Below are positions 3 through 64,000 of a DNA stretch of 64,000 nucleotides, in pieces. Location: IMG/VR virus record IMGVR_UViG_3300020810_001156, positions 62,001 to 126,000 of that record; one strand, given 5' to 3'. The translations under genes were made by a program, and so were the position numbers. The notes below the pieces were generated by a model. That model saw only the letters and a list, made by a program, of their open reading frames with translations, searched no databases and was not told the DNA's origin. The stretch's first letter is position 1. The number at the start of each line of letters is the position of its first letter.

Positions 3-236
3 CAAAACGAAAAAGAATTACCCCCACCACCACCAAAACCAGAGGATAAGGCTAATCCATATAAGCCAGTATCTACACCATCTGGTGGCTCTCCTCGTAG
101 AGGTGGCGGAGGTGGAGGCGGAGGCCGAAACGAATTTATAGAAAGAGACGAATTTAATGATTTTGGAGATAGATTCGATGACTTTGGAAGAGATGATAGC
201 ATCCTCAGACCTAATTATGATATAAGACAATTCTAA
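3..236 (+). CDS. 3' end of a gene entering from the left edge (Pro-rich/Gly-rich C-terminal tail)
   Basis: Open frame from base 3 (QNEKELPPPPPKPEDK...RGGGGGGGGRNEF...IRQF) ends at TAA 234-236, which overlaps the next ATG (TAATG). Not in the ORF track because it has no start in the window. Confidence 0.6.
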   Translation, partial: QNEKELPPPPPKPEDKANPYKPVSTPSGGSPRRGGGGGGGGRNEFIERDEFNDFGDRFDDFGRDDSILRPNYDIRQF

Positions 237-3200
237 TGCCAGCACCAAAAAACATATTAGATATTTTAAAATCTTTGGGAGCAAACAAAGTTCCACCAAA
301 GAATAATGCCATTATATCATTATCTGATTTAAATAAATCTGGTAAAGCGGGTGGTGGAGCATTTAATCCTATTAATGATATTTTAAAACCAATAAACCCT
401 ATAAACTATCCAACTAAACCAGTAAATGATTTAGGATTAAAATCAAATATTCCAAATACAAAAAAAGCAAACGAAAAGAAATTGCCTGAGGTATCTTTAT
501 CAGATAGACCTAAAAATCTAAATGAAGTTGAAGAACAAAAAGATATTGTAACTAAGTTAGATGAGGGAACTCAAGATAATGAAACATCTAATATCTTAGA
601 TAGAGCAGTTAGTTTAACAATTAATGTTGTTGATGAGTATTCTGTAACTGTACCAGATATTAGAAGAATCACATATCCCAAAGTAATTAGGGGTGCTGAT
701 TTTATTGGATATGATGTTGATTTTAAATTAAGATTTGATGTAGAAGGATTAGAAAGAAGTGGGTTTGTTGAAGTTGGTATTGGTAGAGTTAAAAATGCAT
801 TTACAACAAGAGAATTTAATCTTAATTTTAATGTACAAGAGATTCTAATCAACTATCTTGATATGGAAGGTACTGAAGATGTTGATAAAATTAAGATACC
901 AATATCATTAACTCCTGTAAACCAAAATCTAAGAAAAGAAAAGGTAAGGGGTGAAACAGAAACTTTTACTATTTTATTTGATAAGGGTGATTTAGATATA
1001 CCACGTTCGGTTGCTATTAACAGGATATCAGAAGGATTCATTTCTCAATTTAATAAATGTAGTTTTGATGATTCAACATATCTTACTCACTTATTACATT
1101 TGGGGGATGGTAACAACAAAGTAATAACAACTTGGAGAGGATTGCAAGAAATCACTCAAACTGGTGGTGATGCATCTTCGTTAATTTTAAAGTTATATGA
1201 ACCCCTTTCAAACGATATACAAACAAATCAAAAAGTTTGGATTACTAAAATTCAAACCAATCCTATATTTGAGACACTCACATTATTGGGTGATACGCAG
1301 GATTACTGCCCACCATTACAAGGACCTAATTTTTCGTTAGAATCTGATAATGGTATTGGATATCAAGTATATAGTGATTTACTTGCAAGTGGTTCATCAA
1401 CAAATGATGCACTAATAAGAGAGTATGGTGAAAAAGTTGGTATAGATACCAAAAAATTAAATATTCAATATGTAAGTGGTTCCGAATATGTATTTGAAAA
1501 TTTTGTACATTTTGGTTCGGCTGAAGAAAGAATTAAAAACTTCCAATATAAAGTTGAACTATTAGAATCATATCAAACAAAATATAATAGTTTATCGGTA
1601 TCTCAAGTAGAATTGGGGTATTTATTAGCAGAGGGTGGATTGGTTGATGAATATACAATCATAAGTGAACCAGCTTCTTCCAGTTTACAAATTGAGGCTA
1701 TAAGTGTAACAGCAGCTTCGGTGGTACAAGCTAATCAACAATTGGTTAATATAAACAATCTTATCAAAACATTTGATGGATTTGAAAACTTTTTATATAC
1801 ATCAACCAATTCATTAGCATATCCTAAGAGCGGAAGTTCAATTATAGCATCAACCGATTCTCAGGCAATTGCTTGGTATAATACTGCTGTAAATGAAGCC
1901 GCAACATTTGATAGAAATAATGTAGATTACCTAAACAACAATCTTCCAGAATTTATTAGAGAAGATTATCAGAACGAGGACTTTATGTTGTTTATGGATA
2001 TGTTAGGGCATCATTTTGATGTTATTTGGGCATATATTAATGGGTTAAACAATTTAAGAAAACCAGAACATAAAGCAGATTTAGGATTTTCAAGTGATTT
2101 GGTTTCTACAATGTTAGAATCGTTGGGATGGGATGGTAGAAAAGCTTATGATTCTCAACATTTATGGGAATATGCTTTAGGACAATACAAAGATGGTACT
2201 GAAAAATATCAACAATCTCTTAAATCAGCAAATGAAGAAGTTTGGAGAAGAATCCTTAACAACTTACCTTACTTATTAAAACACAAAGGTACTTCTCGTT
2301 CTTTAAAAGCAGTAATGGCTTGTTATGGTGTTCCACAATCACTCCTTACAATTATGGAGTTTGGTGGACCAACTGACCCAACTGATGGTGGTACTCAACC
2401 ATTTACATTTGAAGATAGAACTTCTGAACTTGTTTTAAGTGGTAGCGATAGTTCTTATATTCAAATACCATTTAATGATATCGATGATTACAGCGCTAGA
2501 GGTATTGAATTTAGGGTTAATTCTACTATACCAAAAGATACATCGTTAATTAAAATGATGGACCCATCTGGTACAGAAGCAGAATGGGAATTTAAAATAT
2601 CCCAAACCACTGGTAGTTTTGCTAACTTAGATTTATATGTAAGTTCAAGCTCAGAACTACATTCGGCATCTATTGATAATGTTAGATTCTTTGATGGTGA
2701 GTATAAACAAATTCTTATCAACAAAAGTGAAGATGGAAGTGATGATACATTCAATGTGTATTTAAGAGATTCCATTAATGGTAGAATACGAACAGAAAAA
2801 GCATCAAATACTCTAAGTATTACTAATGCAAATTGGACTGGTAGTGGATTGGGTATTGGGCGTTCATTGCGAGTTGGTAATGGATTTAATGGTTCGCTTG
2901 ATGAATTTAGATTATGGAAAACTCCGTTAGAAACTAACTTATTAGATACGCATACACTACAACCAGATTCGATAGCTGGAAACAGCTATACGGCATCATC
3001 TGAAGATTTAGTACTTAGATTTGATTTTGAACTTCCTAAAGATTTATCATCATCCACAACAATAAATAATGTTGCTATTAGTACCGAATATAATGTTAAT
3101 GGAACCGCTGTTGGATTTAATTCAATATCAGATTATCCATATCATTATAGAAGTTATGAAAGAACAATAACTGCAAAAGTTCCATCATTAGGATTTAATC

Positions 3201-4459
3201 AAGCTGATAAAATTAGATTTGAAACTCAAGAACTTGTTGGTAATTTATCACACAAAGTTAGAGCAACCAAAAAATCATTAGATAGGGCGCCAATCGATTC
3301 ATCTCGTTTAGGATTATTCTTCTCCCCAATCAAAGAGTTGAATATGGATATCATTAAATCATTTGGTAACTTCAATATTGATAATTATATTGGAGCACCT
3401 GCTGATGAATACAAAGATGAATATACGGAATTAAAATCATTAAGAGATTATTACTTCCAAAGATTAAATAGAGATATCTACGAATATATCAGATTAATTA
3501 GATACATTGATAAATCTTTATTCGATGTATTGGAAGATTTAGTTCCTGCTAGAGCAAAAGTTTCTAAAGGTTTATTAATCGAACCTCACTTTTTAGAAAG
3601 AAGTAAAACTAAATGGGATAAACCAACATCTGAAAAAAGAGATTATGAAACCAGTGTAGATGTTGATGAAGATGTAATTTTAATTGGTGATAACAATCAA
3701 TTTCAAGCTAACATAGATGGGGAATCTGATGTAGTATTAACACATCAGTATGATAACTATGAAGCAAATGTTGATGGTGAGGATGATATTGTATTAACAT
3801 CAACCAACCCACAATATGATTCATCTATCGATGTTGATAATGATACGAATTTATTGGGTACATATCCAACATATGTTTCGGAAATTGAAGTTCCCGATGG
3901 AAGTAAATTAGATGCATCGGCTGAATCATTTGGATTTGAACAAATTGGTATGGACCCGAATTCATTAAATAATGCTGGATTTGGATTATTTACACCAATT
4001 GAAAAATATGGTGAAGTTAGTACATTGGATATATTTGGAAATTTATCTGGAAGTAGACAGCAAGTATATTTAATAAAAGAATCATACATAGAAAAAGTAC
4101 CTACTCAAGTTGCAGGATATCCTACAACAACAACCAATGAGCAGGTTAGATATGAAGATGTAGAGGTTACTAAGTTTAGATACAAAGTAACAAAAGTACC
4201 ATTTGGAGCACCAGACCCATCGGTTGGAAACGATGTAGTTGAAGTAACTCCGTTAAAGGGATACTTATCATCTCACTATCGATATAAAAACAACCTATCA
4301 CAAGGATTAAAAAATTCATTCTTTGAAGGTTCAAAACAAACAATAAATACAACCCCAGATGGGTTATCTCCTGTTGAAACATTTACTACGAATCCGAACA
4401 TTTTAAGAGTTGCGGATACTGGTAGAGGAAGTGGAGAACCAATTCTTGAGGTAGATTAA
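236..4459 (+). CDS. Large baseplate wedge-type protein (T4 gp7 / P2 gpI-like motifs) with a LamG/concanavalin-like domain
   Basis: 1407 aa. LPEFIREDY..FMLFMDMLGHHFD and YLLKHKGTSRSL resemble wedge-protein motifs; the LamG-like end GFNGSLDEFRLWKTPL is visible; it lies next to tail-attachment genes. Confidence 0.62.
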   Translation: MPAPKNILDILKSLGANKVPPKNNAIISLSDLNKSGKAGGGAFNPINDILKPINPINYPTKPVNDLGLKSNIPNTKKANEKKLPEVSLSDRPKNLNEVEEQKDIVTKLDEGTQDNETSNILDRAVSLTINVVDEYSVTVPDIRRITYPKVIRGADFIGYDVDFKLRFDVEGLERSGFVEVGIGRVKNAFTTREFNLNFNVQEILINYLDMEGTEDVDKIKIPISLTPVNQNLRKEKVRGETETFTILFDKGDLDIPRSVAINRISEGFISQFNKCSFDDSTYLTHLLHLGDGNNKVITTWRGLQEITQTGGDASSLILKLYEPLSNDIQTNQKVWITKIQTNPIFETLTLLGDTQDYCPPLQGPNFSLESDNGIGYQVYSDLLASGSSTNDALIREYGEKVGIDTKKLNIQYVSGSEYVFENFVHFGSAEERIKNFQYKVELLESYQTKYNSLSVSQVELGYLLAEGGLVDEYTIISEPASSSLQIEAISVTAASVVQANQQLVNINNLIKTFDGFENFLYTSTNSLAYPKSGSSIIASTDSQAIAWYNTAVNEAATFDRNNVDYLNNNLPEFIREDYQNEDFMLFMDMLGHHFDVIWAYINGLNNLRKPEHKADLGFSSDLVSTMLESLGWDGRKAYDSQHLWEYALGQYKDGTEKYQQSLKSANEEVWRRILNNLPYLLKHKGTSRSLKAVMACYGVPQSLLTIMEFGGPTDPTDGGTQPFTFEDRTSELVLSGSDSSYIQIPFNDIDDYSARGIEFRVNSTIPKDTSLIKMMDPSGTEAEWEFKISQTTGSFANLDLYVSSSSELHSASIDNVRFFDGEYKQILINKSEDGSDDTFNVYLRDSINGRIRTEKASNTLSITNANWTGSGLGIGRSLRVGNGFNGSLDEFRLWKTPLETNLLDTHTLQPDSIAGNSYTASSEDLVLRFDFELPKDLSSSTTINNVAISTEYNVNGTAVGFNSISDYPYHYRSYERTITAKVPSLGFNQADKIRFETQELVGNLSHKVRATKKSLDRAPIDSSRLGLFFSPIKELNMDIIKSFGNFNIDNYIGAPADEYKDEYTELKSLRDYYFQRLNRDIYEYIRLIRYIDKSLFDVLEDLVPARAKVSKGLLIEPHFLERSKTKWDKPTSEKRDYETSVDVDEDVILIGDNNQFQANIDGESDVVLTHQYDNYEANVDGEDDIVLTSTNPQYDSSIDVDNDTNLLGTYPTYVSEIEVPDGSKLDASAESFGFEQIGMDPNSLNNAGFGLFTPIEKYGEVSTLDIFGNLSGSRQQVYLIKESYIEKVPTQVAGYPTTTTNEQVRYEDVEVTKFRYKVTKVPFGAPDPSVGNDVVEVTPLKGYLSSHYRYKNNLSQGLKNSFFEGSKQTINTTPDGLSPVETFTTNPNILRVADTGRGSGEPILEVD

Positions 4460-4477
4460 TTAAATTTTAAAATAGTT

Positions 4478-4486
4478 ATATTTATT
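4478..4486 (+). promoter_or_regulatory. Putative phage late promoter (ATATTTATT)
   Basis: One of 13 intergenic copies of ATA[T/C]TTAT[A/T]; 36 nt upstream of ATG 4523. Confidence 0.55.
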
Positions 4487-4522
4487 AGTACATAATAAAC
4501 AAAAGGGCAAATTAAAAAAATT

Positions 4523-5166: not shown

Positions 5167-6378
5167 ATGGCAATTATAAACGACCCAAATATATCCGCTC
5201 AACTACAAGCGTTAGCACAAGGCGGAACAATCGATAGTAATGATGTAGTAGCCCTTTTAAACTCAGCATTACCTGCGGGACAGCAATTACAATCTGGCGC
5301 AGGTGTAACTACTGGAATTTATAAAAGATTCGGTGAGTTTGATAAGGTAAATGCAAAAATTGAAGTAGTAACAACTGGATTATGGACAGGTGATGTAGGT
5401 TCATTAACGGCACTTTATACTTCATCTGCTCAAGTAGCTGGTACAAGTGCTAAGTACTACTATAATGCTTACGCCGGAGATACAGCAGTAACTTCATCAG
5501 CTGAAGTTCAATTCGCTGTAGCATATGGACATTTAAATGGAAGTGGTTCAATATCATTAGCAAATTCAGATGATGCATTACTACCAACTAAAGCAACTTA
5601 CGCTCAATATAAATCAGTTTTGTTAGACCCAACCGATACACAATTCTCATTTGAAAATGGTAGTGGTATAGCAAACGATTCAAACGCAATCTACGCTATC
5701 AATATCAATAGAGCGAGATATAGAGAGAAAATGGACCCGGGTAACTGGTCATTACAACTTTCTGGTTCTAATGGATTATTTACTTTCATTGATGATAGTG
5801 GTAAGAAGTTTGGAGATACATTAGGAAAAGCTGGTAGAGTATTTAAAGTAGTAAGTGGTTCACTTAACTTAGGTACTGAAGATGCAGCTACAATCAATAC
5901 AACAACCGCATCTAACAATGAGGGATATGGATTGTTCTATCCTGATAGAGGTATTATCATTCTTAACCCAACTGCAATCGCTGATACTGTTGGTAACGCA
6001 TTTGATGCTGATTGGGGTTCTTTAGGAACTTTAGCTGGAGATACTGGAGTAGATGCTGATAAAGAAAATCATAAGAGATTATTCTACGCAATTCATCATG
6101 GTGGTGATTTCCAAGCTAGAAGAACTGAAAACGTATCAACACAACATTTCTTCGTAAGAGCAACGAATAGAGAATTTAACTATTCAAACAACCCAACTTA
6201 TGTAAATGCCAATGGAACATTCACAGAAACAACATTTGAAACTGACCCAAGAACTTATATTACAACGGTTGGATTATTAAATGATGCAAATGAAACAATA
6301 GCAGTAGCTAAAACTTCTCAACCAATTGAAAAATCATTTGATAAAGAAGTATTAATTAAAGTTAAACTTTCATTCTAA
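5167..6378 (+). CDS. Virion baseplate/tail protein with a gpH/DUF3751-like C-terminal segment; paralog of 6466..7404
   Basis: C-terminus YITTVGLLNDANETIAVAKTSQPIEK; shares FYxDRG and EFNxSxNPT motifs with the next gene. Confidence 0.55.
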   Translation: MAIINDPNISAQLQALAQGGTIDSNDVVALLNSALPAGQQLQSGAGVTTGIYKRFGEFDKVNAKIEVVTTGLWTGDVGSLTALYTSSAQVAGTSAKYYYNAYAGDTAVTSSAEVQFAVAYGHLNGSGSISLANSDDALLPTKATYAQYKSVLLDPTDTQFSFENGSGIANDSNAIYAININRARYREKMDPGNWSLQLSGSNGLFTFIDDSGKKFGDTLGKAGRVFKVVSGSLNLGTEDAATINTTTASNNEGYGLFYPDRGIIILNPTAIADTVGNAFDADWGSLGTLAGDTGVDADKENHKRLFYAIHHGGDFQARRTENVSTQHFFVRATNREFNYSNNPTYVNANGTFTETTFETDPRTYITTVGLLNDANETIAVAKTSQPIEKSFDKEVLIKVKLSF

Positions 6379-12415: not shown

Positions 12416-13234
12416 ATGAAAATAGGAATTGTTGGACAGGGTTTTGTGGGTAATGCGGTGTATCAGAAATTCAAAGAGTATTATGATGTACTTACTTATG
12501 ATTTAGATGAAACTAAATGTAATTCAATCTTAGAAGAAGTTGCTAAATGTGATTATGTATTCACTTGCTTACCAACTCCAATGAATGGGGATGGTAGTTG
12601 TAATACCAATATTGTAGAAGGTGTAATCAAACAAATTGATGAGATTGGTAAAACGAAGGGTATTGTGGTTAAATCAACTATTGTACCCGGTACTACTCAA
12701 AAATGGAATGATGAATATAAAACAAACATCGTATTCAATCCAGAATTCCTTACTGAAAGAAATGCGGTTAAAGATTACGAAAATCAAAACCGAATTATAT
12801 TAGGAGGACCAAGACCAACAACTACTCATCTGAAAAGAATATTTTCAAAAGTATTTCCAAGTGCATATATAATAAAAACTGATTCAACTCATGCTGAAAT
12901 GGTAAAGTATTTAACAAATACATTTCTTTCAACTAAAGTATCTTTTGCAAATGAGATATATCAAATTTGTAAAGGTTTAGATATCGATTATGATAAAGTA
13001 GTAGAATATGCAACCCACGATGAAAGATTGGGTAAATCACATTGGAACGTACCGGGTCATGATGGTGATTTTGGTTTTGGTGGACATTGTTTCCCCAAAG
13101 ATTTATCAGCACTTTTAAGATTAGCAGAAGATTTGAATGTGGTTGATAATGTACTCAGTGCAGTAGAACAAACTAATTACTCAGTTAGAAAGAATAGAGA
13201 TTGGGAAAAGATGAAAGGGAGAGCAGTTATTTAG
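12416..13234 (+). CDS. ugd: UDP-glucose/GDP-mannose dehydrogenase family protein, short form without the C-terminal domain
   Basis: Rossmann GIVGQGFVG, CLPTP, KSTIVPGTT, FNPEFLTE, catalytic GFGGHCFPKD; ends at 272 aa. Confidence 0.82.
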   Translation: MKIGIVGQGFVGNAVYQKFKEYYDVLTYDLDETKCNSILEEVAKCDYVFTCLPTPMNGDGSCNTNIVEGVIKQIDEIGKTKGIVVKSTIVPGTTQKWNDEYKTNIVFNPEFLTERNAVKDYENQNRIILGGPRPTTTHLKRIFSKVFPSAYIIKTDSTHAEMVKYLTNTFLSTKVSFANEIYQICKGLDIDYDKVVEYATHDERLGKSHWNVPGHDGDFGFGGHCFPKDLSALLRLAEDLNVVDNVLSAVEQTNYSVRKNRDWEKMKGRAVI

Positions 13235-22299: not shown

Positions 22300-22689
22300 A
22301 TGAGTGATATACGATACTTTGGACATTATGATGAAAATGGGGATTATAAAGCATTTTTCCCAACGGATATACATCCCGATACAGGTTCTATGGACACTCC
22401 CAACATAGAGTTAACAAAAGAACAATGGATTGAGGCAAGGCAAACTAGATGTAGAGTAATCGATGGTATTCACACAGTTGTACCATTAACTACCGAAGAA
22501 CAAAACGAAAGAGATTTACAAAATATTAGAAGAGAAAGAAATGAACTTTTGGATAAATCGGATTGGGTTGTACTTCCTCATTCTCCTATTACTGGTTCTA
22601 AATTAGATGATTGGTTACAATATCGACAATATTTAAGAGATGTAACTTCTCAAACTCCTCCATATACTTTACCAACTCAACCGGAATAA
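22300..22689 (+). CDS. Tail fibre assembly chaperone (Tfa/TAC-like)
   Basis: IRRERNELLDKSDWVVLPHSP...WLQYRQYLRDVT motif; directly downstream of the fibre gene. Confidence 0.8.
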   Translation: MSDIRYFGHYDENGDYKAFFPTDIHPDTGSMDTPNIELTKEQWIEARQTRCRVIDGIHTVVPLTTEEQNERDLQNIRRERNELLDKSDWVVLPHSPITGSKLDDWLQYRQYLRDVTSQTPPYTLPTQPE

Positions 22690-57800: not shown

Positions 57801-60800
57801 TATTGAGTACGCACAAAGATTAACTGAGGTTGCATCTCAAAACAAAGGAACACAAATTGGAATTGTATCGGCAAGTATTGATATGATTAACGATATTATT
57901 AGATTAGGTTCTGATGATATTCCATTTACTATCGCTAAGCATTTCCAAACTTCTGAGTTAGATACTCCACAACAATTAACAACGGGTTCTTATACTCAAA
58001 TAGCTGGACCTACATTAGATTCAGAATACAACAATGGTTCAATTATATCTTTAACTGGTGATGGTAGTGATTTCTTCAAAAAAGAAGTTACAGTCAATGG
58101 TGTAAGAATTGTTGTAGCCGGTGATGTTGGTGGACAAACTGCTGTACCTGATGCATTTACTGAGAAAGTTGCTCGTATGTTTGAATTATTTACTGACCCA
58201 AGTGGTTCGGGAATAAATGAAACATTCCAAAGAAATTTAATTAAAACATTAAGTGGTGATAGTGGAACTTACCACGCTGGATTACCAACTATACAAAGAG
58301 TAGCAAGAGGAGCTGGAAGTGATTATACTCCAAACTTCCTTGATGATGCTGGTATTTTATATTGGAACTTAACAAACTTGTTTGATACTCATGTACAAAA
58401 CGATATGGTTTGGTATCTAAACTCAACAGGTGATATATCTGGTTCTGGTGATATAGATGCACAAGAAGTAATTGAACACATATTCCACACATTACATATG
58501 CATGGTTTACCTGCAGATGATATAAAACTATATTCTTATTTGGCATCTGATTGGCAGACTGGTGATTTATATCTTGCAATGGAAGAGGCATATGATGCTG
58601 GATTGTGGGATTCATCGGGATATGGTGGTAATAGTTGGAAAACTGATTCTGATGCATTTGAGGTAGCTGCTAAAGAATATCTATATTTGTTAAACTTCTC
58701 AATGTTTGAATATACCGATTTATGGGAAAATGGAAGTCTTTCTCCTGAGTGGGATGATTCAATGAGAACACAAGCTGGAATTTTAGCAAATAACCCATTA
58801 GGTTATGCATTCCATAACACATATATTTCACCTACAATTAGTAAACCATCATTGGCAACTATTAGAAGTATATTCCAAGATGGTGATTTGGGTGACCCAA
58901 CAATAGCAGGTGAATCTGGATATGTTGTAACTCCAACTGGAACTTATACAACTGATACTGAATTAGCAATCGTAAGTAGTTCATTCTCATTAATTAATGA
59001 TATTATTGAAAATACAACATCATCTATTGCTGATTTTGTTGATAATACTTACAACAAACGTAAGTTTACAAACACAACTCAATATTCATCTTCTGTATCT
59101 GCATCAACGGCTGAACTTTCAATTGTTGATAATAGATTTGGAATTGTGGTGGACATTGTTGAAAATGGATTATCTCAAAAACCAACTATCGTAAGAAATA
59201 ATACCGATGTTGATAACCTAATTAAGGTAACGGATACTCCACAATATATTTCAGCATCATCAGCTGATAAACTACAATCTAAGATTGTATCTTCATCAAT
59301 CGCTATTGTAACTGATATTATTGAGAATGGAAGTGGTTCGGCACCTACGATTATTGAGTACACAACTCCATCTGATTCTCCAAAAGCTAAATTGGCTTAT
59401 CAGTTAATTAAGAATAACCTACCATTTATTGTATCTGAATCAATCGCTTACATTTCATCTTCTTGGAGTGATTTCTCATACAACGAAGCAAGTTGTAGTA
59501 GAGATGTTGCATTGATTGTGAGTGGTGCAGCGGAAGATTTAATTTGGAACTCAAATTCCGCATCGGTGGTAAATGGTAAGTTCTACTTAGAATATCCATC
59601 TGCCGCAACTGGTTCTCAATTACAACAAACATTAGATGGTATCAATTATGCTAGTACTCTAACTCAACACATTGTAAGAAATAGAACATTCGTAACCGCA
59701 TCATCATCAGTTTCGGCATCTTACAACTTATTGGTTGAAAACAAAGAATTTATCCAAAACGAAACTATCGCTTACTTATCTTCTTCTTGGAGTGATTTCT
59801 ATTACTCCGAATCTAAGTGTAAGAGAGATGTTGGGTATATTATAGATGCAGTAGCAACTGATTTGAAATATGGTGGTAATGAAAGAAGTGTTATTGCTGG
59901 AGATTACTATTATAGATATCCATCAGCAGCGATTGTGGGTGGTGTACCAAATGTAGACCAACAAAAAGACCCAACTGTAACTGGTATCAATTACGCTAAA
60001 TCATTGGCAAATGAGTTACTAAGTGGTTCTCAGTTTGTAACTGCTTCAAACGAAGTTGAATTCGTTTACGATTCAATTAGAGAAAATAGAGAATTTATCC
60101 AAGCGGAAACTGTTGCATTTGTAAACGCTAAATATCCAAACTTAGAATACAACGAAGCTAGTTGTAGTAGAGATGCTGGATTCATCGTAGATGCGGTAGC
60201 AACTGATTTAAGATGGGGTGGTAACCAACGCTCAATCGTAGCTGGACAGTACTACTATAAATTCCCATCACAAGCAACAACCGCACAATTGGGTGAAACT
60301 ACTGATGCAGTAATTTACGCATCTAAGTTGGTAACTGAATTGATTGATAAGAATACTTTACCAATTCCATCAGCTAGTTTGAATACTAACAATAATATTA
60401 AAGTAACATCAACACCTCAATACATTTCAGCATCTTCTGCTGGTGAAGTTGAATTAACTAAGATTAGTTCTTCATTCGCATCAGTTAGTGGTATTGTTGA
60501 AGATGGTGTGAGTGTTATCCCAACATTAGTTGAAAACTTAAATGAGAACATTAAAGTAACAAATGTTACTCAATACATTTCTTCATCAGCTAGTGGTTCA
60601 TTAGAAAATATTTCATTTATTTCAGAATCGGTTGAGATTGTAACTGATATTATTTCTAATGGAACTGGTTCACTTCCATTGTTTGGAACTTATACAACTC
60701 CATCAACTGATGAAAGTACAATCGCAGCTTACCAAATCCTAAGAAGTAATATTTCATTCATTCAATCGGAATCAATAGCTTACTTATCATCTTCTTGGAG

Positions 60801-63297
60801 TACGGCATCTTATGATGAAGCTAAATGTGCTAGAGATATTAAGTTGATTATTAGTGGAGCAGCTGAAGATTTAATTTGGAACGCTAATTCCGCATCTATT
60901 GTAAATGGTAAATTCTACTATGAATACCCATCCCAAGCGCAAGGAGCTCAATTAAATCAAACTTTAGATGGTATCAATTACGCAAGTAGATTGGCACAAA
61001 AACTTATTCAAAATATTGAATTTGTAACTGCATCTTCTGAAAGAGTTGTAACATCTGAATTGTTGAGATTGAACACACCATTCATTCAGACTGAAACAAT
61101 CGCTTACTTATCTTCATCTTGGTCAACTTTTGATTATGATGAAGTAACTTGTAAGAGAGATGTTGGATACATTATTGATGCTGTAAGAACTGATATTGTA
61201 TATGGTGGTAACGAAAGAACTAACAAAGCAGGAAACTTCTACTACTTATATCCATCACAAGCAACTGGTTCTCAATTAGACCAAACATTGGATGGAATCA
61301 GATACGCTGGTAGATTGGCTGAGAAAGTTGCTAGTAATATTCAATTAGTATCACCATCATCAGCTTCTCAACAATCTTATGATTTATTAAGAGATAACAA
61401 AGGATTCATTCAAAGTGAATCAATCGCTTACTTATCATCTTCTTGGAGTGAGTTTGATTACAACCAAGAAACTTGTAAGAGAGATATTGGATACATCTTA
61501 GATGCTATTTCAACTGATATTCTTTATGGTGGAACTGAGAGAAGTGTAATAGCTGGAAATTACTATTACAAATATCCATCATCAGCAACTAACGCTCAAT
61601 TAGACCCAACGGTAACTGGAATTGAGTACGCGGGTGATATGATGGAAAAAGTAATTGTAAACCAAATATTCCAATCTCCATCAGCTGAAAGAATTGCTGG
61701 TAACGAATCGTTACTAAACAATAGAACATTCATTCAATCAGAATCATTGGCTTACTTAACTGCTAGTTGGAGTACATTTGAGTACAACAAAGATAAGTGT
61801 GCTAGAGATGTTGGATATATTGTGGATGCAGTTGCAACTGATTTCTTATATGGTGGAAATGAAAGAAGTAGAACCGCTGGTGAATACTACTACTTATATC
61901 CATCGGAAGCAACTTCAGTTCAAGCAAATCAAACAACTGATGGTGTGAAATACGCTGGTAGAATCTCTGAAGCATTGGTTCAAAATATCCAATTCGTAAC
62001 AGCATCTACCGAAGTATCCGCATCGTTTGACTTGTTGAGAAAGAACAAACCATTTATCGCTGAAGAAACAATTCAGTATGTATCTTCTTCTTGGAGTGGT
62101 GTTTACTATGATGAAGCTAAATGTAGAAGAGATACTGGATTCATAGTAGATGCAGCAGCAACCGATTTATTGTATGGTGGTAACGAAAGAAGTGTTATCG
62201 CTGGTAATTACTACTTCAAATACCCATCATCGGCAACTGAAAGAGGTGTACCTTCGGTGGTATCTCAATTAGACCCAACAACTACTGGTATCAAATATGC
62301 TAGTGGATTGGCTCAAAATGTGATTCAAAATATTGAATGGAACGAACCATCAGCATCGGTATTAGTTGCGGCTGATTTATTGGTGAATAACAAAACATTT
62401 ATTCAAAAAGAAACTATCGCATTTTTATCTTCATCTTGGAGTGAGTTCGCTTACAATGATGTAAGTTGTAGTAGAGATTTGGGTTACATCATAGATGCGG
62501 TTAGAACTGATTTGGTATATGGTGGTAACGAAAGAAGTATCCAAGCGGCTACATTCTATTACTATATTCCTTCAGTAGCAATTACTGAACAAAAACCCCA
62601 AACAATCGATGGTATTGATTTCGCAAAAGGAATGGCTGAAAAAGTTATTAAGCAAGACCAATTAACATTCGCTAGTTTGAATAGAAGAAATGGTTACAAT
62701 GAATTAAGAGCAGCGAAGAAATATTTACAATCATCGGCAATTTCATATACTGAAGCAGCATTCCCAGGTTTTGAATATAACGAAGAAAAATGTTATAGAG
62801 ATACTGGATTTATTTTAGATGCTATTTCAACTGATTTACTATATGGTGGTAATGAGAGAAGTATTGAAGCTGCAAAATCTTACTACAATGGTGTTTATGG
62901 TGATGCTAGTGTAGTGATAAACGAACAAAAGAAAGAAACGGCAGAAACAAATAGATATTTAAGAACTTTATTCCAAAAAGTTGCTAGAAATGCACCATTG
63001 GAATTATTTGGTTCACTAATTATTACTACTGGACATGATTTCTCATATGCTGGTTCTGGTGTAACTTATAAAGCATTACCTCCTAACCAAGGTGGTAATG
63101 GAGTTCCAGACCCAGATAAAGAAATTGTTGAATTGGGTGGAGGTAGAGTATTCTTCACTGCGGGTAACGAACTTGGTGACTTTAAGATTGGTACGGGACT
63201 TGTAATTAATCAGGCAACTGGTACATTACAGGGTAGAACATTCTCTCGTTCATTATTCTCATTAGTTACACCATTCTCTCTCGCTCTGGAAGGGTAA
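48811..63297 (+). CDS. Giant virion structural protein (4828 aa): beta-helix-like ends, 24 CxRD helical repeats, about 20 shorter linker repeats, and two inserted domains
   Basis: Uninterrupted ORF. N-terminal YVSATRGDDSNDG..P..TIKRA / QAGTYLE / GAGLRVT is pectate-lyase-like; the repeats are read directly from the translation. Confidence 0.85.
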   Translation: MARLIPQKQIEEVNIFRDSISVGNSVFISGSLLVSQSIDIGNDLTTPQRITGSVQITGSINIDGDLTFARAESRLDATASFSDVSVDTQRFGGIPVAEFGGSDATVYVSATRGDDSNDGRSPQFPVRTIKRAAQIVTPGDDGRYGLPTGSNFTGFRIDVQAGTYLEDNPVELPRNTTVWGAGLRVTKVVAKNENEDLFWVNSGNYLAEMTFAGLRVFPSVDDSQKGFAISFAPNAFITTSPYVQNCSMISNQENSFLEAYEDIPAGGGGLNVDGNRIHPDSPLASMVLDAYTQVAPNGVGCQVVGRGFIQLVSFFTNFSAYSVKVIDGGQAVLLNSNTSFGDFGMYASGSRFITGSGGNTEAFLNVQDNYSIIVDTIERGLGEIPDLVTNTEDGIKVTNELQKFNTGAQASDKDAKTVVSDYRLISNLIERGVENKIPILAVSSDRGYNSGSVWNVSGDNQITSSTTASEDDLSTINTNYDIVLDIIERGNAATSSYIYVDNVSSSIKISDVEQYKSSPVSDITEDTIGERFDTIISIIENGLDFIPEIKLNTSQSFKVTDTTQYITDLSSSLNVREAVSSSLSIVYNILDNGTGSAPAIIQSSSNENPTIDYQNAYALLIENIPFIQEETIAYLSSSWSEFEYNQTTCKRDVGYIVSGAAHDLLYGGNEESVRNGNFYYLYPSDATTTQKDPTLTAIKYVAGMVDNILSDTTFVETTAEADNAYSLLFENKRFIQSESIAYVSSSWSTFEYNEAKCVRDLGYIIDAVATDIKYGGNERSVIAGNFYYKYPSQATVNNSTVGGQLNQTIDGIKYAKRIAQKLAKNETFVTQSASTLTIADTLLQNRSLIQDETITYINTTYPNFSYNEAKCRRDTGYILDGVITDLRYGGVERSQLSGLYYYLYPSIANTTQLEETLEGIRYSKGFALEVAQSNLIEIPTAKRNIEKRIKVGDVQYITSSISGTEFESKYISGSIGIVEDIIRFGNDSVLASIAENTGSFNWSISSPINVSSVLPITSSVTESVNIQNVSDGFDIVTSIIAGGESVIPQPTSSWEGTIKVTDTPQYISSSLSSTSTEATLVSQSIAIVANIVQNGVDSLPPLTASIDGLIKVTNQLQNTDYSGSLTEATKVSSSFATITNIVENGVGVIPTIVSNTNENIKFFNDSVQYISSSFSGSLEDVSFISSSISYVTSIIANGTGSYTASEYPSQPLSSSNAIAAYQILRNNIDFIKDETIAYLSSSWSTASYDESKCRRDVGLIISGAAEDLIWGTVSSSIVNGKFYYEYPSQAQGAQLNQTLDGVFFASEVAQKLIQNIEFVTASVERRGAWNAITENEDFIKEEMIQYLSSSWSTFDYNETTCRRDAGYILDAVKTDIYYGGNERSAIAGNFYYLYPSAAILSGSASPTPTTQLVPTLDGLRYAGRITEAVVTGSSFSFPSQAKLDAKNVLLNNKQFVQDETIAYLSSSWSEFSYNQTTCKRDIGFIIDAAVTDVVYGGNERSRIASNFYYRYPSAAIVGGVPSTTQQKDPTVDGIKYVGGISEKIVLGETFTSADSTKITIKNSIIDNKSNVQQQTIDYINDTYPNLNYNNDKCFRDVGFIIDAVVTDLVYGGNGRSVQAGAFYYRFPSQATFSQLSETVDGINFARDLIKLDLRGANSVENSFDTVIKIIESGSSIVTEETIGTGSAPVPESQIGDPISTIGIPKDSYGDGLVKTVITTSIPTFELTENTDSGIKFGSDTQITGSITSSVSESLKVSSSFSDIIDIIKYGTSGSLSLSGSFDTSTYYEVVTPETGDYYIINRAQLDEFDGVRAGGYFNTEENTGSFSDGIKDPTLTLKRGEMYTFSVNALKYDLNPFYIKTARKPNKEALYNEGVTNNGVNFGTLTFIVPLEAPDRLYYVNGNNVSASGIINVVDNLPISDTQRYIEVPSKGFVEITTNNVDNIKISNISQYSSSFSASVDESHEISSSFATTIEILKNGVDDLPTIVENTSGSIKVTNTSQITSSITPSEYELNNVSSSYAIVIDVLQNGTSSLPTEISNTSASIKVTDVPQYISSSVSGTLENVNFISSSVSIVYNIVQLGSSGSYTASLYDTGSGVSTDESTIAAYQIIRNNIPFIQSESLAYLSSSWSTASYDEVKCGRDIGLIISGAAEDLIWGTVSSSVVNGRFYLEYPSQAETSQLNQTLDGIEYASKLTQKLIQNIQFVTASNEASASHQLLLDNKVLIQNETIEYISSSWSDFVYSDILCRRDIGHIVDAAATDILYGGNERSVQAASFYYSNPSAATGSQLNQTVDAINYARRISNKILQNQVLELPELQTLGVAELISENKSLIQEETIQFLSSSWSTFEYNEAKCRRDTGYIIDAVVTDFVYGGNERAVNAGEFYYLYPSDATGSQLTQTVDGITYAQRLTNKLINNITLVTSSLERRATKDLLMDNKGLIQNEVIHFISSSWSTFEYNESKCKRDVGYILDAIATDIVYGGNERSVVAGEFYYRYPSEATTTQLDQTITGVKHAAGLSEKIIQNTLLVNPDSNTLEAYNRIRNNKLFIQSEVIEFVDNLYPYFTYNRVKCKRDVGFILDAVATDLLWGGNERSIIAGDYYYRYPSQATTFQLRETIEGIRYAKALTKDVILNKEFERPRIILNSENHIKVDGVPQYSGSMAISGSNLTEISSSFEIINNVILGGLNNLPTEHKGIESLTKVTNAIQTTNSATQSVSDISSSFAIVIDVIQNGVGNIPTIVSNTNNNIKVGNIEQYISSSASGSLENVNFISSSIDIVTDIITNGVGGYVPTNYTTSSTDESTIAAYQILRNNIDFIQEETIAYLSSSWSGFVYDESKCRRDVGLIVSGAAEDLIWNTDSSSIVNGKFYLEYPSQATSSQLDQTLDGIFYASNLAQKLIQNVTFSSADSTIVDSYNSIVNEKATIQSKVIAYLSSSFPTHQYNESKCSRDVGYIIDGVATDLLYGGNERSVKSGNYYYKYPSQATGYQLEETVAGIEYAQRLTEVASQNKGTQIGIVSASIDMINDIIRLGSDDIPFTIAKHFQTSELDTPQQLTTGSYTQIAGPTLDSEYNNGSIISLTGDGSDFFKKEVTVNGVRIVVAGDVGGQTAVPDAFTEKVARMFELFTDPSGSGINETFQRNLIKTLSGDSGTYHAGLPTIQRVARGAGSDYTPNFLDDAGILYWNLTNLFDTHVQNDMVWYLNSTGDISGSGDIDAQEVIEHIFHTLHMHGLPADDIKLYSYLASDWQTGDLYLAMEEAYDAGLWDSSGYGGNSWKTDSDAFEVAAKEYLYLLNFSMFEYTDLWENGSLSPEWDDSMRTQAGILANNPLGYAFHNTYISPTISKPSLATIRSIFQDGDLGDPTIAGESGYVVTPTGTYTTDTELAIVSSSFSLINDIIENTTSSIADFVDNTYNKRKFTNTTQYSSSVSASTAELSIVDNRFGIVVDIVENGLSQKPTIVRNNTDVDNLIKVTDTPQYISASSADKLQSKIVSSSIAIVTDIIENGSGSAPTIIEYTTPSDSPKAKLAYQLIKNNLPFIVSESIAYISSSWSDFSYNEASCSRDVALIVSGAAEDLIWNSNSASVVNGKFYLEYPSAATGSQLQQTLDGINYASTLTQHIVRNRTFVTASSSVSASYNLLVENKEFIQNETIAYLSSSWSDFYYSESKCKRDVGYIIDAVATDLKYGGNERSVIAGDYYYRYPSAAIVGGVPNVDQQKDPTVTGINYAKSLANELLSGSQFVTASNEVEFVYDSIRENREFIQAETVAFVNAKYPNLEYNEASCSRDAGFIVDAVATDLRWGGNQRSIVAGQYYYKFPSQATTAQLGETTDAVIYASKLVTELIDKNTLPIPSASLNTNNNIKVTSTPQYISASSAGEVELTKISSSFASVSGIVEDGVSVIPTLVENLNENIKVTNVTQYISSSASGSLENISFISESVEIVTDIISNGTGSLPLFGTYTTPSTDESTIAAYQILRSNISFIQSESIAYLSSSWSTASYDEAKCARDIKLIISGAAEDLIWNANSASIVNGKFYYEYPSQAQGAQLNQTLDGINYASRLAQKLIQNIEFVTASSERVVTSELLRLNTPFIQTETIAYLSSSWSTFDYDEVTCKRDVGYIIDAVRTDIVYGGNERTNKAGNFYYLYPSQATGSQLDQTLDGIRYAGRLAEKVASNIQLVSPSSASQQSYDLLRDNKGFIQSESIAYLSSSWSEFDYNQETCKRDIGYILDAISTDILYGGTERSVIAGNYYYKYPSSATNAQLDPTVTGIEYAGDMMEKVIVNQIFQSPSAERIAGNESLLNNRTFIQSESLAYLTASWSTFEYNKDKCARDVGYIVDAVATDFLYGGNERSRTAGEYYYLYPSEATSVQANQTTDGVKYAGRISEALVQNIQFVTASTEVSASFDLLRKNKPFIAEETIQYVSSSWSGVYYDEAKCRRDTGFIVDAAATDLLYGGNERSVIAGNYYFKYPSSATERGVPSVVSQLDPTTTGIKYASGLAQNVIQNIEWNEPSASVLVAADLLVNNKTFIQKETIAFLSSSWSEFAYNDVSCSRDLGYIIDAVRTDLVYGGNERSIQAATFYYYIPSVAITEQKPQTIDGIDFAKGMAEKVIKQDQLTFASLNRRNGYNELRAAKKYLQSSAISYTEAAFPGFEYNEEKCYRDTGFILDAISTDLLYGGNERSIEAAKSYYNGVYGDASVVINEQKKETAETNRYLRTLFQKVARNAPLELFGSLIITTGHDFSYAGSGVTYKALPPNQGGNGVPDPDKEIVELGGGRVFFTAGNELGDFKIGTGLVINQATGTLQGRTFSRSLFSLVTPFSLALEG
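50650..62990 (+). repeat. Coding tandem repeats: 24 copies of a ~108-aa unit (N..FI..E..AYL...Y...KCxRD.G.I.DA...DL.YGGN.RS..AG..YY..PS)
   Basis: First Cys codon at 50755, last at 62791; many neighbouring units are 324 nt apart (e.g. around 55880, 56204, 56527). Confidence 0.92.
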
Positions 63298-63311
63298 TAA
63301 ATTAAAGTTGA

Positions 63312-63320
63312 ATATTTATA
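63312..63320 (+). promoter_or_regulatory. Putative phage late promoter (ATATTTATA)
   Basis: Recurrent motif 19 nt before ATG 63340. Confidence 0.6.
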
Positions 63321-63339
63321 TAAGATAAAGTGAAAAAAC

Positions 63340-64000
63340 ATGGCAGATGAATTAATTCCATTAAACGCATTTAAATCAGTAGTTGCAACTTTGACTGGTG
63401 AGGAAGACCAGGTGTATAAAGCACCTACTGGTGTTTCTACTATTATATTATCGGCTCAAATTACAAACAATGGTACACAAACCCAAGAAGTTGTAATTAA
63501 GTTAGCACCAAACAGAATTTTACCAGTTCCACAAGTTGCTGGAATTGCAAATTCAGGAAGTTTCTTCTCATCATCAGCATTAATAGTTGAAAATAAAAAT
63601 TTCCTTAAAAAAGAAGTAGCTGCTTACACTAGATTCAATAATAATCTTCAAGAAATTCCATTTGGATTTTCATCATCAAGATATGAAGAATATGTTGAAA
63701 CCGCTGTAAACGCTGTAACATTTGATATAATTAATAGTGGTAGTACAATTAGAACCAATAAAGCGGCACTATCTTTTTATGATAAAGATGGTGTATTATT
63801 GATTCCATCAAATCAAATTACAGCATCAATAAATGCAATATCGTACACAAATACACTTGCTCAGAAAATTATTCTAAATGAATCAGTAACGGGTTCTGAT
63901 GATGTAGATAGATTATATCAATCAAGCGTAACACAATCAATTAATACTAATTTAATAGCTGAAAGTGGTTCATCAAATATTATAAGAGAACTATTTACTG
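63340..64000 (+). CDS. 5' part of a further virion protein running off the right edge; contains a Cys-less copy of the 108-aa repeat
   Basis: ATG 63340, open to the end of the window (MADELIPLNAFKSVVATL...); missing from the ORF track because it has no stop. Confidence 0.8.
   Translation, partial: MADELIPLNAFKSVVATLTGEEDQVYKAPTGVSTIILSAQITNNGTQTQEVVIKLAPNRILPVPQVAGIANSGSFFSSSALIVENKNFLKKEVAAYTRFNNNLQEIPFGFSSSRYEEYVETAVNAVTFDIINSGSTIRTNKAALSFYDKDGVLLIPSNQITASINAISYTNTLAQKIILNESVTGSDDVDRLYQSSVTQSINTNLIAESGSSNIIRELFT

What the first reader, a model, noticed from the sequence alone, without database searches (positions are those of the whole stretch)
236..64000. Virion-wide hydrophobic-[S/T]-[G/A/S]-S motif: a candidate glycosylation sequon
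Seen: tail, baseplate, neck and fibre proteins are full of tetrapeptides such as VSGS, LSGS, ITGS, FTGS, VSAS, ISAS, YTAS and LSSS (e.g. VTGSASGSFFGS in the 2802-aa fibre, ITGSVQITGSI and YLSSSW in the 4828-aa protein). The motif also clusters in the variable insertion of the major capsid protein (VTAS, FASAS, FVSAS, VAGSG). By eye it is rare in primase, SbcDC, terminase, portal, the sugar enzymes and the internal head proteins. Established: AAH/TibC enzymes heptosylate Ser in short motifs on exposed beta-structures. Inference: surface-exposed virion proteins have been selected to carry an acceptor sequon for the phage's own O-glycosyltransferase(s), giving a glycan-coated virion. I did not count the motif exhaustively.
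Basis: partly seen in the sequence, partly recalled or inferred. Interest (0 to 1): 0.8.

Follow-up and report, generated by a model that had tools for sequence, protein, structure and literature searches.

The report
Serine motif in phage fibre proteins
A short serine-ending four-residue motif really is over-represented, but only in this phage's fibre proteins, and the phage also encodes a genuine protein-heptosylating enzyme, so sugar-coated fibres are plausible but unproven.

Summary
The motif [VILFY][ST][GAS]S is real. It is 5-9 times commoner than composition predicts, it depends on residue order, and it requires Ser at position 4 (Thr shows no excess). It survives local shuffling and collapse of internal repeats.

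It is not virion-wide. It is confined to about six fibre-like proteins (4828, 2802, 1407, 403, 312 aa and a cut ORF). The other 34 ORFs, including portal, neck, protease and capsid, sit at expectation (4 vs 4.0). The capsid-insertion claim fails.

The transferase is real. ORF 25258-26409 passes NCBIfam's Aah/TibC equivalog cut-off and matches TibC at E 2.5e-48, with the catalytic Asp and all four iron-finger Cys. It sits in a GT4/methyltransferase plus HldE-like cassette next to the 2802-aa fibre.

In 128 non-redundant viral loci carrying this enzyme, the gene immediately downstream is motif-rich in 14/113 cases (0/100 upstream) or collagen-like (G-S/T-S)n in 16/113.

Against a dedicated sequon:
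- The enzyme-less phage immuto keeps motif-rich tail proteins.
- A sister subclade without the cassette at the syntenic site also keeps them.
- In the giant protein's helical repeats the motif sits at helix ends, not in strand-loop-strand.

Verdict: fibre heptosylation is likely. The motif is probably an older structural turn that the enzyme may use as acceptor.

The parts
48811..63297 (+). 4828-aa giant fibre-like virion protein, the main carrier of the motif. It has an N-terminal ISGS/ITGS segment, then a beta-helix-like domain, then about 18 all-helical 108-aa repeats (..AYLSSSWS..KCxRDxGY..) interleaved with ..qyISSS..fISSS.. units.
   Evidence: 82 hits vs 9.5; 8.1 vs 1.4 after repeat collapse. 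PHROG giant tail-fibre/virion families phrog_4527, 5342 and 701. AF2 model of two repeats is all-alpha with the motif at helix ends and loops. Clade relatives keep 5-9x enrichment.
13880..22288 (+). 2802-aa tail fibre with 26 motif sites, mostly in tandem cadherin/Ig-like beta-sandwich domains. C-terminal Gp53-like domain.
   Evidence: 26 vs 4.25. Order-specific. Robust to local shuffles. No DNA tandem repeats. Pfam Gp53-like_C. AF2 model of residues 930-1200 has pLDDT 78 and places the motif at loop-to-strand junctions and hairpin loops. Foldseek gives cadherin-like hits at E 1e-5. Sites such as LSGS and FTSS are conserved in 9 homologues at 39-55% identity.
22300..22689 (+). Tail-fibre assembly chaperone.
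   Evidence: PHROG tail fibre assembly families, E 1e-12.
23084..25267 (+). 727-aa fusion of a GT4 glycosyltransferase, a methyltransferase and a weak GT25-like domain. Likely extends or methylates the glycan.
   Evidence: Pfam Glycos_transf_1, Methyltransf_24, Glyco_transf_25. Syntenic with the BAHT in all relatives with TerL identity of 85% or more. Analogous GT4+FkbM/MTase genes precede the BAHT in distant loci.
25258..26409 (+). 383-aa Aah/TibC-family (BAHT) protein O-heptosyltransferase.
   Evidence: NCBIfam TIGR04414 equivalog, 272 bits against a cut-off of 200. phmmer to TibC 4RAP, E 2.5e-48 over residues 42-375. Asp110, Thr226, Lys230, Trp305 and Cys339/342/358/370 equivalents are conserved in that alignment.
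26406..26795 (+). 129-aa HldE domain II-like heptose-1-phosphate adenylyltransferase (candidate).
   Evidence: Best NCBIfam hit is rfaE_dom_II, E 1.2e-29, but 103 bits is below the cut-off of 181. Pfam CTP_transf_like.
26788..27540 (+). 250-aa HldE domain I-like heptose-7-phosphate kinase (candidate).
   Evidence: Best NCBIfam hit is rfaE_dom_I, E 3.8e-29, below cut-off. Pfam PfkB.
236..4459 (+). 1407-aa fibre/baseplate-like protein with 6 motif sites.
   Evidence: 6 vs 1.16, z 4.3. At most 2 of 400 local shuffles reach 6. Weak Laminin_G_3 hit.
5167..6378 (+). 403-aa protein of unknown family with 4 motif sites.
   Evidence: 4 vs 0.44. 0-1 of 400 local shuffles reach 4.
63340..64000 (+). ORF cut by the window end (220 aa seen) with 4 motif sites.
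   Evidence: 4 vs 0.35.
43614..45230 (+). Major capsid protein. The claimed motif cluster is not significant.
   Evidence: 2 vs 0.68. T4-type capsid, 52% identical to the immuto and Mel-JY01 capsids. The two sites are not conserved in relatives.
12416..13234 (+). Nucleotide-sugar dehydrogenase (UDP-glucose dehydrogenase-like), another sugar gene among the fibre genes.
   Evidence: NCBIfam TIGR03026, 196.5 bits against a cut-off of 189.8. Pfam UDPG_MGDP_dh.

Best explanation
The window comes from a roughly 250-kb T4-like aquatic myovirus. Its fibre proteins, and only those, carry a sharply defined tetrapeptide: hydrophobic-[S/T]-[G/A/S]-Ser. The motif lies at short turns, namely loop-to-strand junctions and hairpin loops in beta-sandwich domains, and helix ends in the helical repeats.

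Shown: the phage encodes an Aah/TibC-type cytoplasmic protein O-heptosyltransferase, flanked by HldE-like sugar-activation genes and a GT4-methyltransferase, next to its largest fibre gene.

Inferred: during infection the cassette makes ADP-heptose and the transferase adds heptose to exposed Ser residues of folded or folding fibre proteins. The GT4/methyltransferase possibly extends or methylates the sugar. The motif's terminal Ser is a favoured acceptor, so the fibres, not the whole virion, are glycan-decorated.

The motif itself is most likely an older structural turn element of this fibre family that the enzyme exploits, not a sequon that evolved for the enzyme.
For: - Enzyme identity.
- Cassette synteny in every relative with TerL identity of 85% or more.
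- Motif statistics.
- Ser-only position 4 matches the Ser-not-Thr modification reported for TibC (PMC4358343).
- Motif placement at loops between strands in the fibre model fits the loop-between-strands acceptor geometry reported for BAHTs (PMC8151025).
- The same helical repeat in cyanophages S-PM2 and S-H9-1, in whose genomes no BAHT was found, lacks the motif. Counts are 5 vs 3.8 and 2 vs 2.6, and the LSSSW position reads LDEF, STAF or VAIY.
- T4 fibres show no enrichment.
- In Mel-JY01 the two genes just upstream of the fused BAHT have 17 vs 2.5 and 8 vs 0.8 hits.
- In 128 non-redundant viral BAHT loci the immediately downstream gene is motif-rich in 14/113, against 0/100 upstream and 20/629 elsewhere (p 1.6e-4). 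It is collagen-like (G[ST][ST]) in 16/113 against 1/100 and 21/629 (p 2.4e-5). This orientation mirrors aah-aidA and tibC-tibA.
Against: - Immuto (complete genome, no BAHT, no GT4-MTase) has a protein with 10 vs 1.0 hits and 33 vs 11.4 over its tail region.
- The TerL 81-83% sister subclade lacks the cassette within 20 kb upstream of TerL, yet its equivalent giant protein has 40 vs 5.8 hits, including 14-residue VSGS repeats.
- One BAHT-positive relative (L016) has a motif-poor neighbouring fibre, 1 vs 4.5.
- Mapped TibA sites are N-S-G-G and T-S-A-A, Ser followed by small residues, not Ser preceded by them. Published work reports no consensus sequon.
- About a third of the giant protein's sites lie at helix termini in an all-alpha repeat.
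- Arg286 of TibC is not matched in the pairwise alignment.
- GmhA and GmhB genes were not seen in the window.
- No direct evidence of any glycan.
Confidence: 0.45

Rival explanations
1. The motif is purely structural. It is a lineage-specific turn or capping element of a family of fibre modules (beta-sandwich loop-strand junctions, 14-residue VSGS beta-spiral-like repeats, helix ends). The heptosyltransferase acts on something else, for example only on collagen-like or other phage proteins outside the window.
For: - The motif persists at 7-10x in BAHT-less immuto and in the subclade without the syntenic cassette.
- Motif sites are conserved blocks together with their flanks.
- The sites occupy regular secondary-structure boundaries in both models.
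- Published work on the known enzymes reports no consensus sequon.
Against: - The same helical fold in cyanophages does without the motif, so no fold requires it.
- The motif recurs in alpha and beta contexts.
- Thr is excluded at position 4 although it suits strand starts.
- Motif-rich genes are preferentially immediately downstream of viral BAHT genes.
Confidence: 0.3
2. The sugar cassette serves another target altogether: host lipopolysaccharide or surface modification (superinfection exclusion), or phage DNA hypermodification. The nearby fibres are coincidental members of a 'host recognition cluster'.
For: - Pelagimyophage host-recognition clusters mix tail fibres with rfaE, UDP-glucose dehydrogenase and glycosyltransferases, and were interpreted as O-chain modification (PMC7029224).
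- Phage gene clusters with kinase and cytidylyltransferase genes can put heptose on 5hmC DNA (bioRxiv 10.1101/2023.12.21.572611).
- The window has a GT25-like (LPS family) domain.
Against: - The enzyme scores as an equivalog of the protein-modifying Aah/TibC family (272 bits) and only 27 bits for LPS heptosyltransferase I.
- The DNA heptosyltransferases described are T4 beta-GT-like, not TibC-like.
- There is a directional operon-like link to Ser-rich fibre genes.
Confidence: 0.15
3. The enrichment is an artefact of Ser/Thr/Gly-rich composition or of recently amplified internal repeats.
For: - 69 of 89 windows of the giant protein belong to one repeat family, so its raw count of 82 is inflated.
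- All H-first orderings are enriched there because of SSS runs.
Against: - Global and local shuffles.
- Order specificity in the non-repetitive 2802-aa fibre.
- Repeat-collapsed excess of 8.1 vs 1.4.
- Ser/Thr discrimination.
- No tandem repeats in the fibre gene.
Confidence: 0.03

Closest known systems
Aah/AIDA-I and TibC/TibA of E. coli (bacterial autotransporter heptosyltransferases, BAHT)
   Same: Full-length homologous enzyme with the catalytic Asp and the iron-finger Cys. It depends on ADP-heptose and acts in the cytoplasm. The transferase gene lies immediately upstream of a large, repetitive, Ser-rich beta-structured surface fibre. Acceptors are Ser in loops between short strands.
   Different: The candidate substrates are phage fibre proteins (cadherin-like beta-sandwiches, helical repeats, collagen-like tracts), not beta-helical autotransporter passengers. 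There is no secretion. The enzyme is partnered or fused with GT4 and methyltransferase domains. A sharp tetrapeptide is present here, whereas no consensus is reported for AIDA-I or TibA.
Virion glycosylation in actinobacteriophages (mycobacteriophage capsid and tail-tube glycosylation by phage-encoded glycosyltransferases; recalled from memory, see also PMC11256854)
   Same: Phage-encoded transferases are proposed or shown to decorate the phage's own structural proteins.
   Different: The enzyme families, the sugars and the targets (capsid and tail-tube C-terminal extensions) all differ. The hosts are Actinobacteria.
BclA collagen-like exosporium glycoprotein of Bacillus anthracis (recalled from memory)
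   Same: A collagen-like Gly-X-Y fibre with Thr/Ser in the triplets that carries O-linked sugars. This is analogous to the (G-S/T-S)n fibres found right after viral BAHT genes.
   Different: It is a bacterial spore protein with rhamnose-based glycans and unrelated transferases. No such tract exists inside this window.
Glycosyltransferase-rich 'host recognition clusters' of pelagimyophages and cyanomyophages (PMC7029224)
   Same: The gene mix among tail-fibre genes of aquatic T4-like phages is the same: rfaE-like, UDP-glucose dehydrogenase and glycosyltransferases.
   Different: Those genes were interpreted as host LPS modification. Here the key enzyme is identified as a protein O-heptosyltransferase and is linked statistically to Ser-rich fibre genes.

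Membership tests
BAHT (Aah/TibC O-heptosyltransferase) - the enzyme ORF 25258-26409 | Full-length match to the curated family model above its trusted cut-off | tested here: met
   TIGR04414 hepto_Aah_TibC equivalog, E 7.5e-81, 272 bits against a cut-off of 200, residues 20-381 on profile positions 9-373 of 374.
BAHT (Aah/TibC O-heptosyltransferase) - the enzyme ORF 25258-26409 | Catalytic base Asp110 and sugar-binding Thr226, Lys230, Arg286 and Trp305 of TibC | tested here: inconclusive
   In the phmmer alignment to 4RAP, the equivalents of Asp110 (LGD), Thr226, Lys230 and Trp305 are identical. Arg286 aligns to Val in a weakly aligned stretch (residue list from PMC4358343).
BAHT (Aah/TibC O-heptosyltransferase) - the enzyme ORF 25258-26409 | Iron-finger with four Cys (C339, C342, C358, C370) | tested here: met
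   C-x2-C ... W-C-P-x-H-K ... F-E-C is conserved. The WCPxH..T...[FY]EC core is kept in 21 sequence variants among viral homologues.
BAHT (Aah/TibC O-heptosyltransferase) - the enzyme ORF 25258-26409 | N-terminal beta-barrel domain | tested here: inconclusive
   Pfam TibC_1st scores 20 bits, below the gathering score of 27. The NCBIfam model does cover the N-terminus.
BAHT (Aah/TibC O-heptosyltransferase) - the enzyme ORF 25258-26409 | Ring dodecamer; transfer of ADP-D,D-heptose to Ser of a protein | not testable with these tools
   Needs biochemistry or structure determination.
BAHT system (enzyme plus substrate) | The substrate is a beta-helical autotransporter passenger with 19-residue repeats, encoded next to the enzyme | tested here: not met
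   The window has no autotransporter. The neighbours are phage fibres. The adjacency logic is kept: Ser-rich fibre genes lie directly downstream in 31 of 113 viral loci.
ADP-heptose supply (HldE-type) | Heptose-7-P kinase and heptose-1-P adenylyltransferase; GmhA isomerase; GmhB phosphatase | tested here: inconclusive
   The best hits are rfaE domains I and II, but both fall below the curated cut-offs. No GmhA or GmhB was recognised among the window ORFs scanned.
Protein O-glycosylation sequon (the motif) | Enrichment beyond composition with position-specific residue requirements, including the acceptor residue | tested here: met
Protein O-glycosylation sequon (the motif) | Sites lie on exposed loops accessible to the enzyme | tested here: inconclusive
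   Only the secondary-structure context from two monomer AF2 models (pLDDT 78) is available. Sites are at loop/strand junctions and hairpin loops in the fibre and at helix ends and loops in the giant protein. Solvent accessibility could not be computed.
Protein O-glycosylation sequon (the motif) | The motif co-occurs with the transferase across genomes | tested here: inconclusive
   For: cyanophages and T4 lack both; Mel-JY01 and 14 further downstream neighbours have both. Against: immuto, and the subclade without the syntenic cassette, keep the motif. BAHT elsewhere in those metagenomic contigs is not excluded.
Protein O-glycosylation sequon (the motif) | Glycan detected on the motif residue | not testable with these tools
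   Needs virion glycoproteomics.

The most novel reading that the evidence does not exclude
A widespread, undescribed phage system. In it, aquatic T4-like and other phages use an Aah/TibC-type heptosyltransferase cassette, often fused to methyltransferases. The cassette hyper-glycosylates their own fibres on Ser. A Ser-specific tetrapeptide and (G-S/T-S)n collagen-like tracts serve as acceptors, and the result is glycan-coated receptor-binding fibres.
Probability: 0.3. Interest if true: 0.8.

Novelty: new variant of a known kind. Interest (0 to 1): 0.6.

Why it matters
If the fibres are heptosylated, three things follow.
- The BAHT family would extend from pathogen adhesins to phage receptor-binding proteins.
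- The glycosyltransferase-rich 'host recognition clusters' of abundant aquatic myoviruses would be reinterpreted as fibre-decorating systems instead of LPS-modifying ones.
- A simple Ser-ending tetrapeptide and collagen-like Ser tracts would become predictors of glycosylated phage fibres.

Glycans on fibres could affect host range, protease resistance and particle stickiness in water.

The hypothesis is directly testable because two relatives are in culture: Mel-JY01 (enzyme present) and the immuto phages (enzyme absent).

Tried and rejected
- Megablast of 24 kb of the window against cultured phages found nothing.
- tblastn of the BAHT-adjacent fibre L071d matched only its C-terminal S74 chaperone domain. 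tblastn of the motif-rich Mel-JY01 protein found only immuto. The N-terminus of the sister-clade giant protein found nothing. A survey of motif-type fibres in enzyme-less cultured phages was therefore not possible this way.
- A search for syntenic relatives through the fibre chaperone returned only the same genome plus unrelated phages.
Absence of the enzyme from particular metagenomic contigs could therefore not be established.
- Walking 20 kb upstream in the cassette-less subclade found a different sugar cluster (epimerases, an RmlC-like gene, a PfkB kinase) and no BAHT. That subclade is therefore not a clean 'no glycosylation' control.
- The neighbourhoods of the BAHT in the huge phages LR756501 and LR756504 held no motif-rich ORF.
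- The capsid-insertion idea was rejected.
- The composition and repeat artefact explanations were rejected.
- Foldseek of the helical repeat gave no hit at E <= 1e-3.
- The rest of the immuto genome was not inspected for other glycosyltransferases.
Full report
**What the window is.** All genes lie on the + strand and GC is about 32%.
- The capsid protein (43614-45230) is T4-type. It is 52-56% identical to those of Flavobacterium phage immuto, Microcystis phage Mel-JY01 and an uncultured 484-kb phage.
- Portal, prohead protease, terminase, primase, an SbcD/SbcC-like protein and neck proteins are recognisable.
- The same sequence is in IMG/VR as a 252.6-kb contig. More than 600 related terminase stretches exist there, so this is an abundant environmental clade.

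**Is the motif real?** Yes.
- I counted [VILFY][ST][GAS]S in 41 ORFs against 500 composition-preserving shuffles each. The results were: 4828-aa protein 82 vs 9.5 (z 24.6); 2802-aa fibre 26 vs 4.25 (z 11); 1407-aa protein 6 vs 1.2; 403-aa protein 4 vs 0.44; the ORF cut at the window end 4 vs 0.35.
- Shuffling only within 12-, 20- or 40-residue windows changes little, so local composition is not the cause.
- Among all 24 orderings of the four residue classes, the 2802-aa fibre is strongly enriched only for the stated order (26 vs 4.4) and its one-residue shift (23 vs 4.2).
- An unbiased tripeptide scan of the six non-4828 fibre-like proteins ranks SGS, SAS and TGS first.
Position 4 is Ser only (42 vs 7.2 with Ser, 6 vs 6.4 with Thr). 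Position 2 takes Ser and Thr equally. Position 3 takes Gly and Ala, then Ser. Position 1 takes Leu, Val, Tyr, Phe and Ile.

**Repeat ancestry.** The giant protein is highly repetitive.
- 69 of 89 54-residue windows form one similarity component.
- Many hits are the same column of an approximately 108-residue repeat (..AYLSSSWS..) or of ..qyISSS..fISSS.. units.
- After keeping one window per family the excess remains at 8.1 vs 1.4. The 20 non-repeated windows have 7 vs 1.3.
- The 2802-aa fibre gene has no tandem repeats worth the name.
- The raw count is therefore inflated, but a 5-6-fold enrichment is robust.

- The motif is not virion-wide. The 34 ORFs outside the fibre set (10,460 residues), which include portal, protease, neck/adaptor and other head proteins, have 4 hits against 4.03 expected. 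They are neither enriched nor depleted.
- The capsid protein has 2 strict hits against 0.68. The two sites lie in a clade-specific insertion but are not conserved in the immuto, Mel-JY01, LR756508 or sister-clade capsids.

**The enzyme.** ORF 25258-26409 (383 aa) is a true member of the Aah/TibC family.
- NCBIfam TIGR04414 ('autotransporter strand-loop-strand O-heptosyltransferase', equivalog) scores 272 bits against a cut-off of 200. LPS heptosyltransferase I scores only 27 bits.
- phmmer against PDB finds only TibC (4RAP, E 2.5e-48, residues 42-375 on 40-379). The alignment shows the catalytic Asp110, Thr226, Lys230, Trp305 and the four iron-finger cysteines. Arg286 is not matched (residue roles from PMC4358343).
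- The gene overlaps a 727-aa GT4 + methyltransferase + weak GT25-like protein upstream. It is followed by small proteins whose best matches are HldE domain II and domain I, both below curated cut-offs.
- The 2802-aa fibre and its assembly chaperone end 3 kb upstream.
- The whole cassette is syntenic in every relative with terminase identity of 85% or more for which enough upstream DNA is held.

**Structural context of the motif.**
- An AF2 model of fibre residues 930-1200 (alignment of 10 homologues, pLDDT 78) gives two beta-sandwich domains, cadherin/Ig-like by Foldseek (E 1e-5).
- In that model FTGS and FTSS lie in loops between strands. LSGS, VSAS, YSSS, ISAS and YTAS straddle the loop-to-strand junction. 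This is compatible with the loop-between-strands acceptor geometry described for BAHTs (PMC8151025).
- A model of two 108-residue repeats of the giant protein (pLDDT 78) is all-alpha. LSSS and ISSS end a helix, VSSS begins one, and VTAS is in the inter-repeat loop.
- The motif is thus fold-independent. That argues against a requirement of one fold, but part of it does not look like a classical BAHT acceptor.

**Comparative tests in favour of a link.**
- The 108-residue repeat has homologues in 65 T4-like cyanophage records. In the cultured-phage collection the BAHT was found in only four records: Mel-JY01 and three uncultured huge phages.
- In S-PM2 p091 and S-H9-1 gp049 the motif is not enriched (5 vs 3.8 and 2 vs 2.6). 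The LSSSW position reads LDEF, STAF or VAIY.
- T4 fibres gp34, gp37, gp12 and others show no enrichment.
- In Mel-JY01 the BAHT is the C-terminal domain of a 1226-aa protein. The two genes just upstream have 17 vs 2.5 and 8 vs 0.8 hits.
- In distant loci the enzyme is fused to a methyltransferase domain and preceded by GT4+FkbM and methyltransferase genes. It is followed by a fibre that begins M-x-I-F-x-P-F-I-T-G-S-L-S-I-S-G-S. That fibre carries long (G-S/T-S)n tracts (Pfam Collagen, E 2.9e-49) and ends in an S74 chaperone domain.
- Over 128 non-redundant loci the immediately downstream gene is motif-rich in 14/113, against 0/100 upstream neighbours and 20/629 other ORFs (Fisher p 1.6e-4 and 1.1e-4). 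It is collagen-like in 16/113 against 1/100 and 21/629 (p 2.4e-5).
- This directional, operon-like arrangement is the one known for aah-aidA and tibC-tibA.

**Comparative tests against a dedicated sequon.**
- Immuto is a complete 160-kb genome with no BAHT hit at E 1e-3 and no homologue of the GT4-methyltransferase. Yet its protein 214, at the position of the giant gene, has 10 vs 1.0 hits (LTGS, VTGS, FSGS, VSSS and others). Its tail region has 33 vs 11.4.
- A sister subclade (terminase 81-83% identical) lacks BAHT, GT4-MTase and the adenylyltransferase within 20 kb upstream and 20 kb downstream of the terminase gene. It has another sugar cluster instead, with epimerases/dehydratases, an RmlC-like epimerase and a PfkB kinase.
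- The protein at the giant's position in that subclade has 40 vs 5.8 hits in 871 residues, largely from 14-residue V-S-G-S-V-L-R-T-L-D-G-T-G-V repeats. This holds in 14 loci. The enzyme could still be elsewhere in those genomes, and another transferase may replace it, so this is not a clean negative control.
- One BAHT-positive relative has a motif-poor neighbouring fibre, although its giant-protein homologue keeps the motif.
- The mapped TibA sites (Q-N-S-G-G and N-T-S-A-A) place small residues after the Ser, not before it. Published work reports no consensus sequon for Aah.

**Synthesis.**
- Shown: the motif; its restriction to fibre proteins; its Ser specificity; the identity of the enzyme; the cassette; the statistical linkage of viral BAHT genes to Ser-rich or motif-rich fibre genes.
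- Inferred: that the fibres are heptosylated and that the motif's Ser is an acceptor.
- The most economical reading is that this fibre family has long used short S/T-G/A-S turns, and that phages which acquired a BAHT cassette glycosylate such exposed Ser. In other lineages this extends to collagen-like Ser tracts. That is different from the motif having been selected as a sequon for this enzyme.
- I put fibre heptosylation at roughly 0.5-0.6, and 'this tetrapeptide is the preferred acceptor' at about 0.3.
- The published alternative for similar gene clusters is host LPS modification (PMC7029224). It fits the family assignment of the enzyme less well.
- In the paper library I found no description of a phage BAHT.

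**A side observation that may deserve its own follow-up.** The 108-residue repeat of the giant protein, and of the cyanophage giants, looks like a phycobiliprotein/globin-fold domain. Details are under Noticed in passing.

Noticed in passing
window 48811-63297, e.g. 55102-55749 (two repeats); also L004 8953-18969 (S-PM2 p091) and L003 9745-20040 (S-H9-1 gp049): The roughly 108-aa helical repeat of the giant protein resembles phycobiliproteins. Foldseek lists dozens of phycocyanins and phycoerythrins (prob 0.9-1.0, E about 1). A 17-unit profile hits 33 phycobiliproteins among 37 PDB matches (best E 0.028). It aligns the invariant K-C-x-R-D-x-G-Y with the bilin-binding Cys-84 motif K-C-A-R-D-I-G-Y of phycocyanin alpha. 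No Pfam Phycobilisome hit was seen at E <= 0.01.
   Followed up: partly
L036 11197-14187, L067 8301-10472, L052 11170-14319, L071 11149-13338 and about 30 further viral loci: Viral Aah/TibC homologues are common in IMG/VR (more than 120 stretches) and are often fused to methyltransferase domains. They are typically followed directly by fibres with (G-S/T-S)n collagen-like tracts (Ser 25-37%) and a C-terminal S74 intramolecular chaperone.
   Followed up: yes
window 20960-21379 (aa ~2361-2500 of the 2802-aa fibre); also the fibre in L016 1054-6861: A Hint/intein-like domain lies inside the tail-fibre gene. Pfam Intein_splicing scores 31 bits, below the cut-off of 35.8, and the segment ends ..NYISNDILSHN. 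Whether it splices or is a degenerate Hint domain is open.
   Followed up: no
L233 18812-21425, L238 18831-21414, L243 18603-21182; L387 1-11000: A sister subclade has a different giant fibre at the same position, built of 14-residue V-S-G-S-V-L-R-T-L-D-G-T-G-V repeats. In place of the BAHT cassette it has a different sugar-nucleotide cluster: epimerases/dehydratases, an RmlC-like epimerase, a PfkB kinase and several unassigned 300-400-aa proteins.
   Followed up: partly
window 9281-12412: A single 1043-aa ORF matches both SbcD-like (N-terminal) and SbcC-like PHROG families, so it is an apparent SbcD-SbcC fusion.
   Followed up: no
window 7627-8040: A 137-aa ORF between the fibre-like genes and the primase matches homing-endonuclease PHROG families. 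Its top hit is labelled 'NAD synthetase'.
   Followed up: no
window 28005-31151: A 1048-aa protein has an N-terminal cytidylyl/adenylyltransferase-like domain. It is homologous to the protein annotated as NadR-type NMN adenylyltransferase in immuto, and is conserved upstream of the terminase in both subclades.
   Followed up: no
window 12416-13234: The nucleotide-sugar dehydrogenase is short (272 aa against a 413-position family model, matching positions 70-297). It may lack the ends of the canonical enzyme.
   Followed up: no
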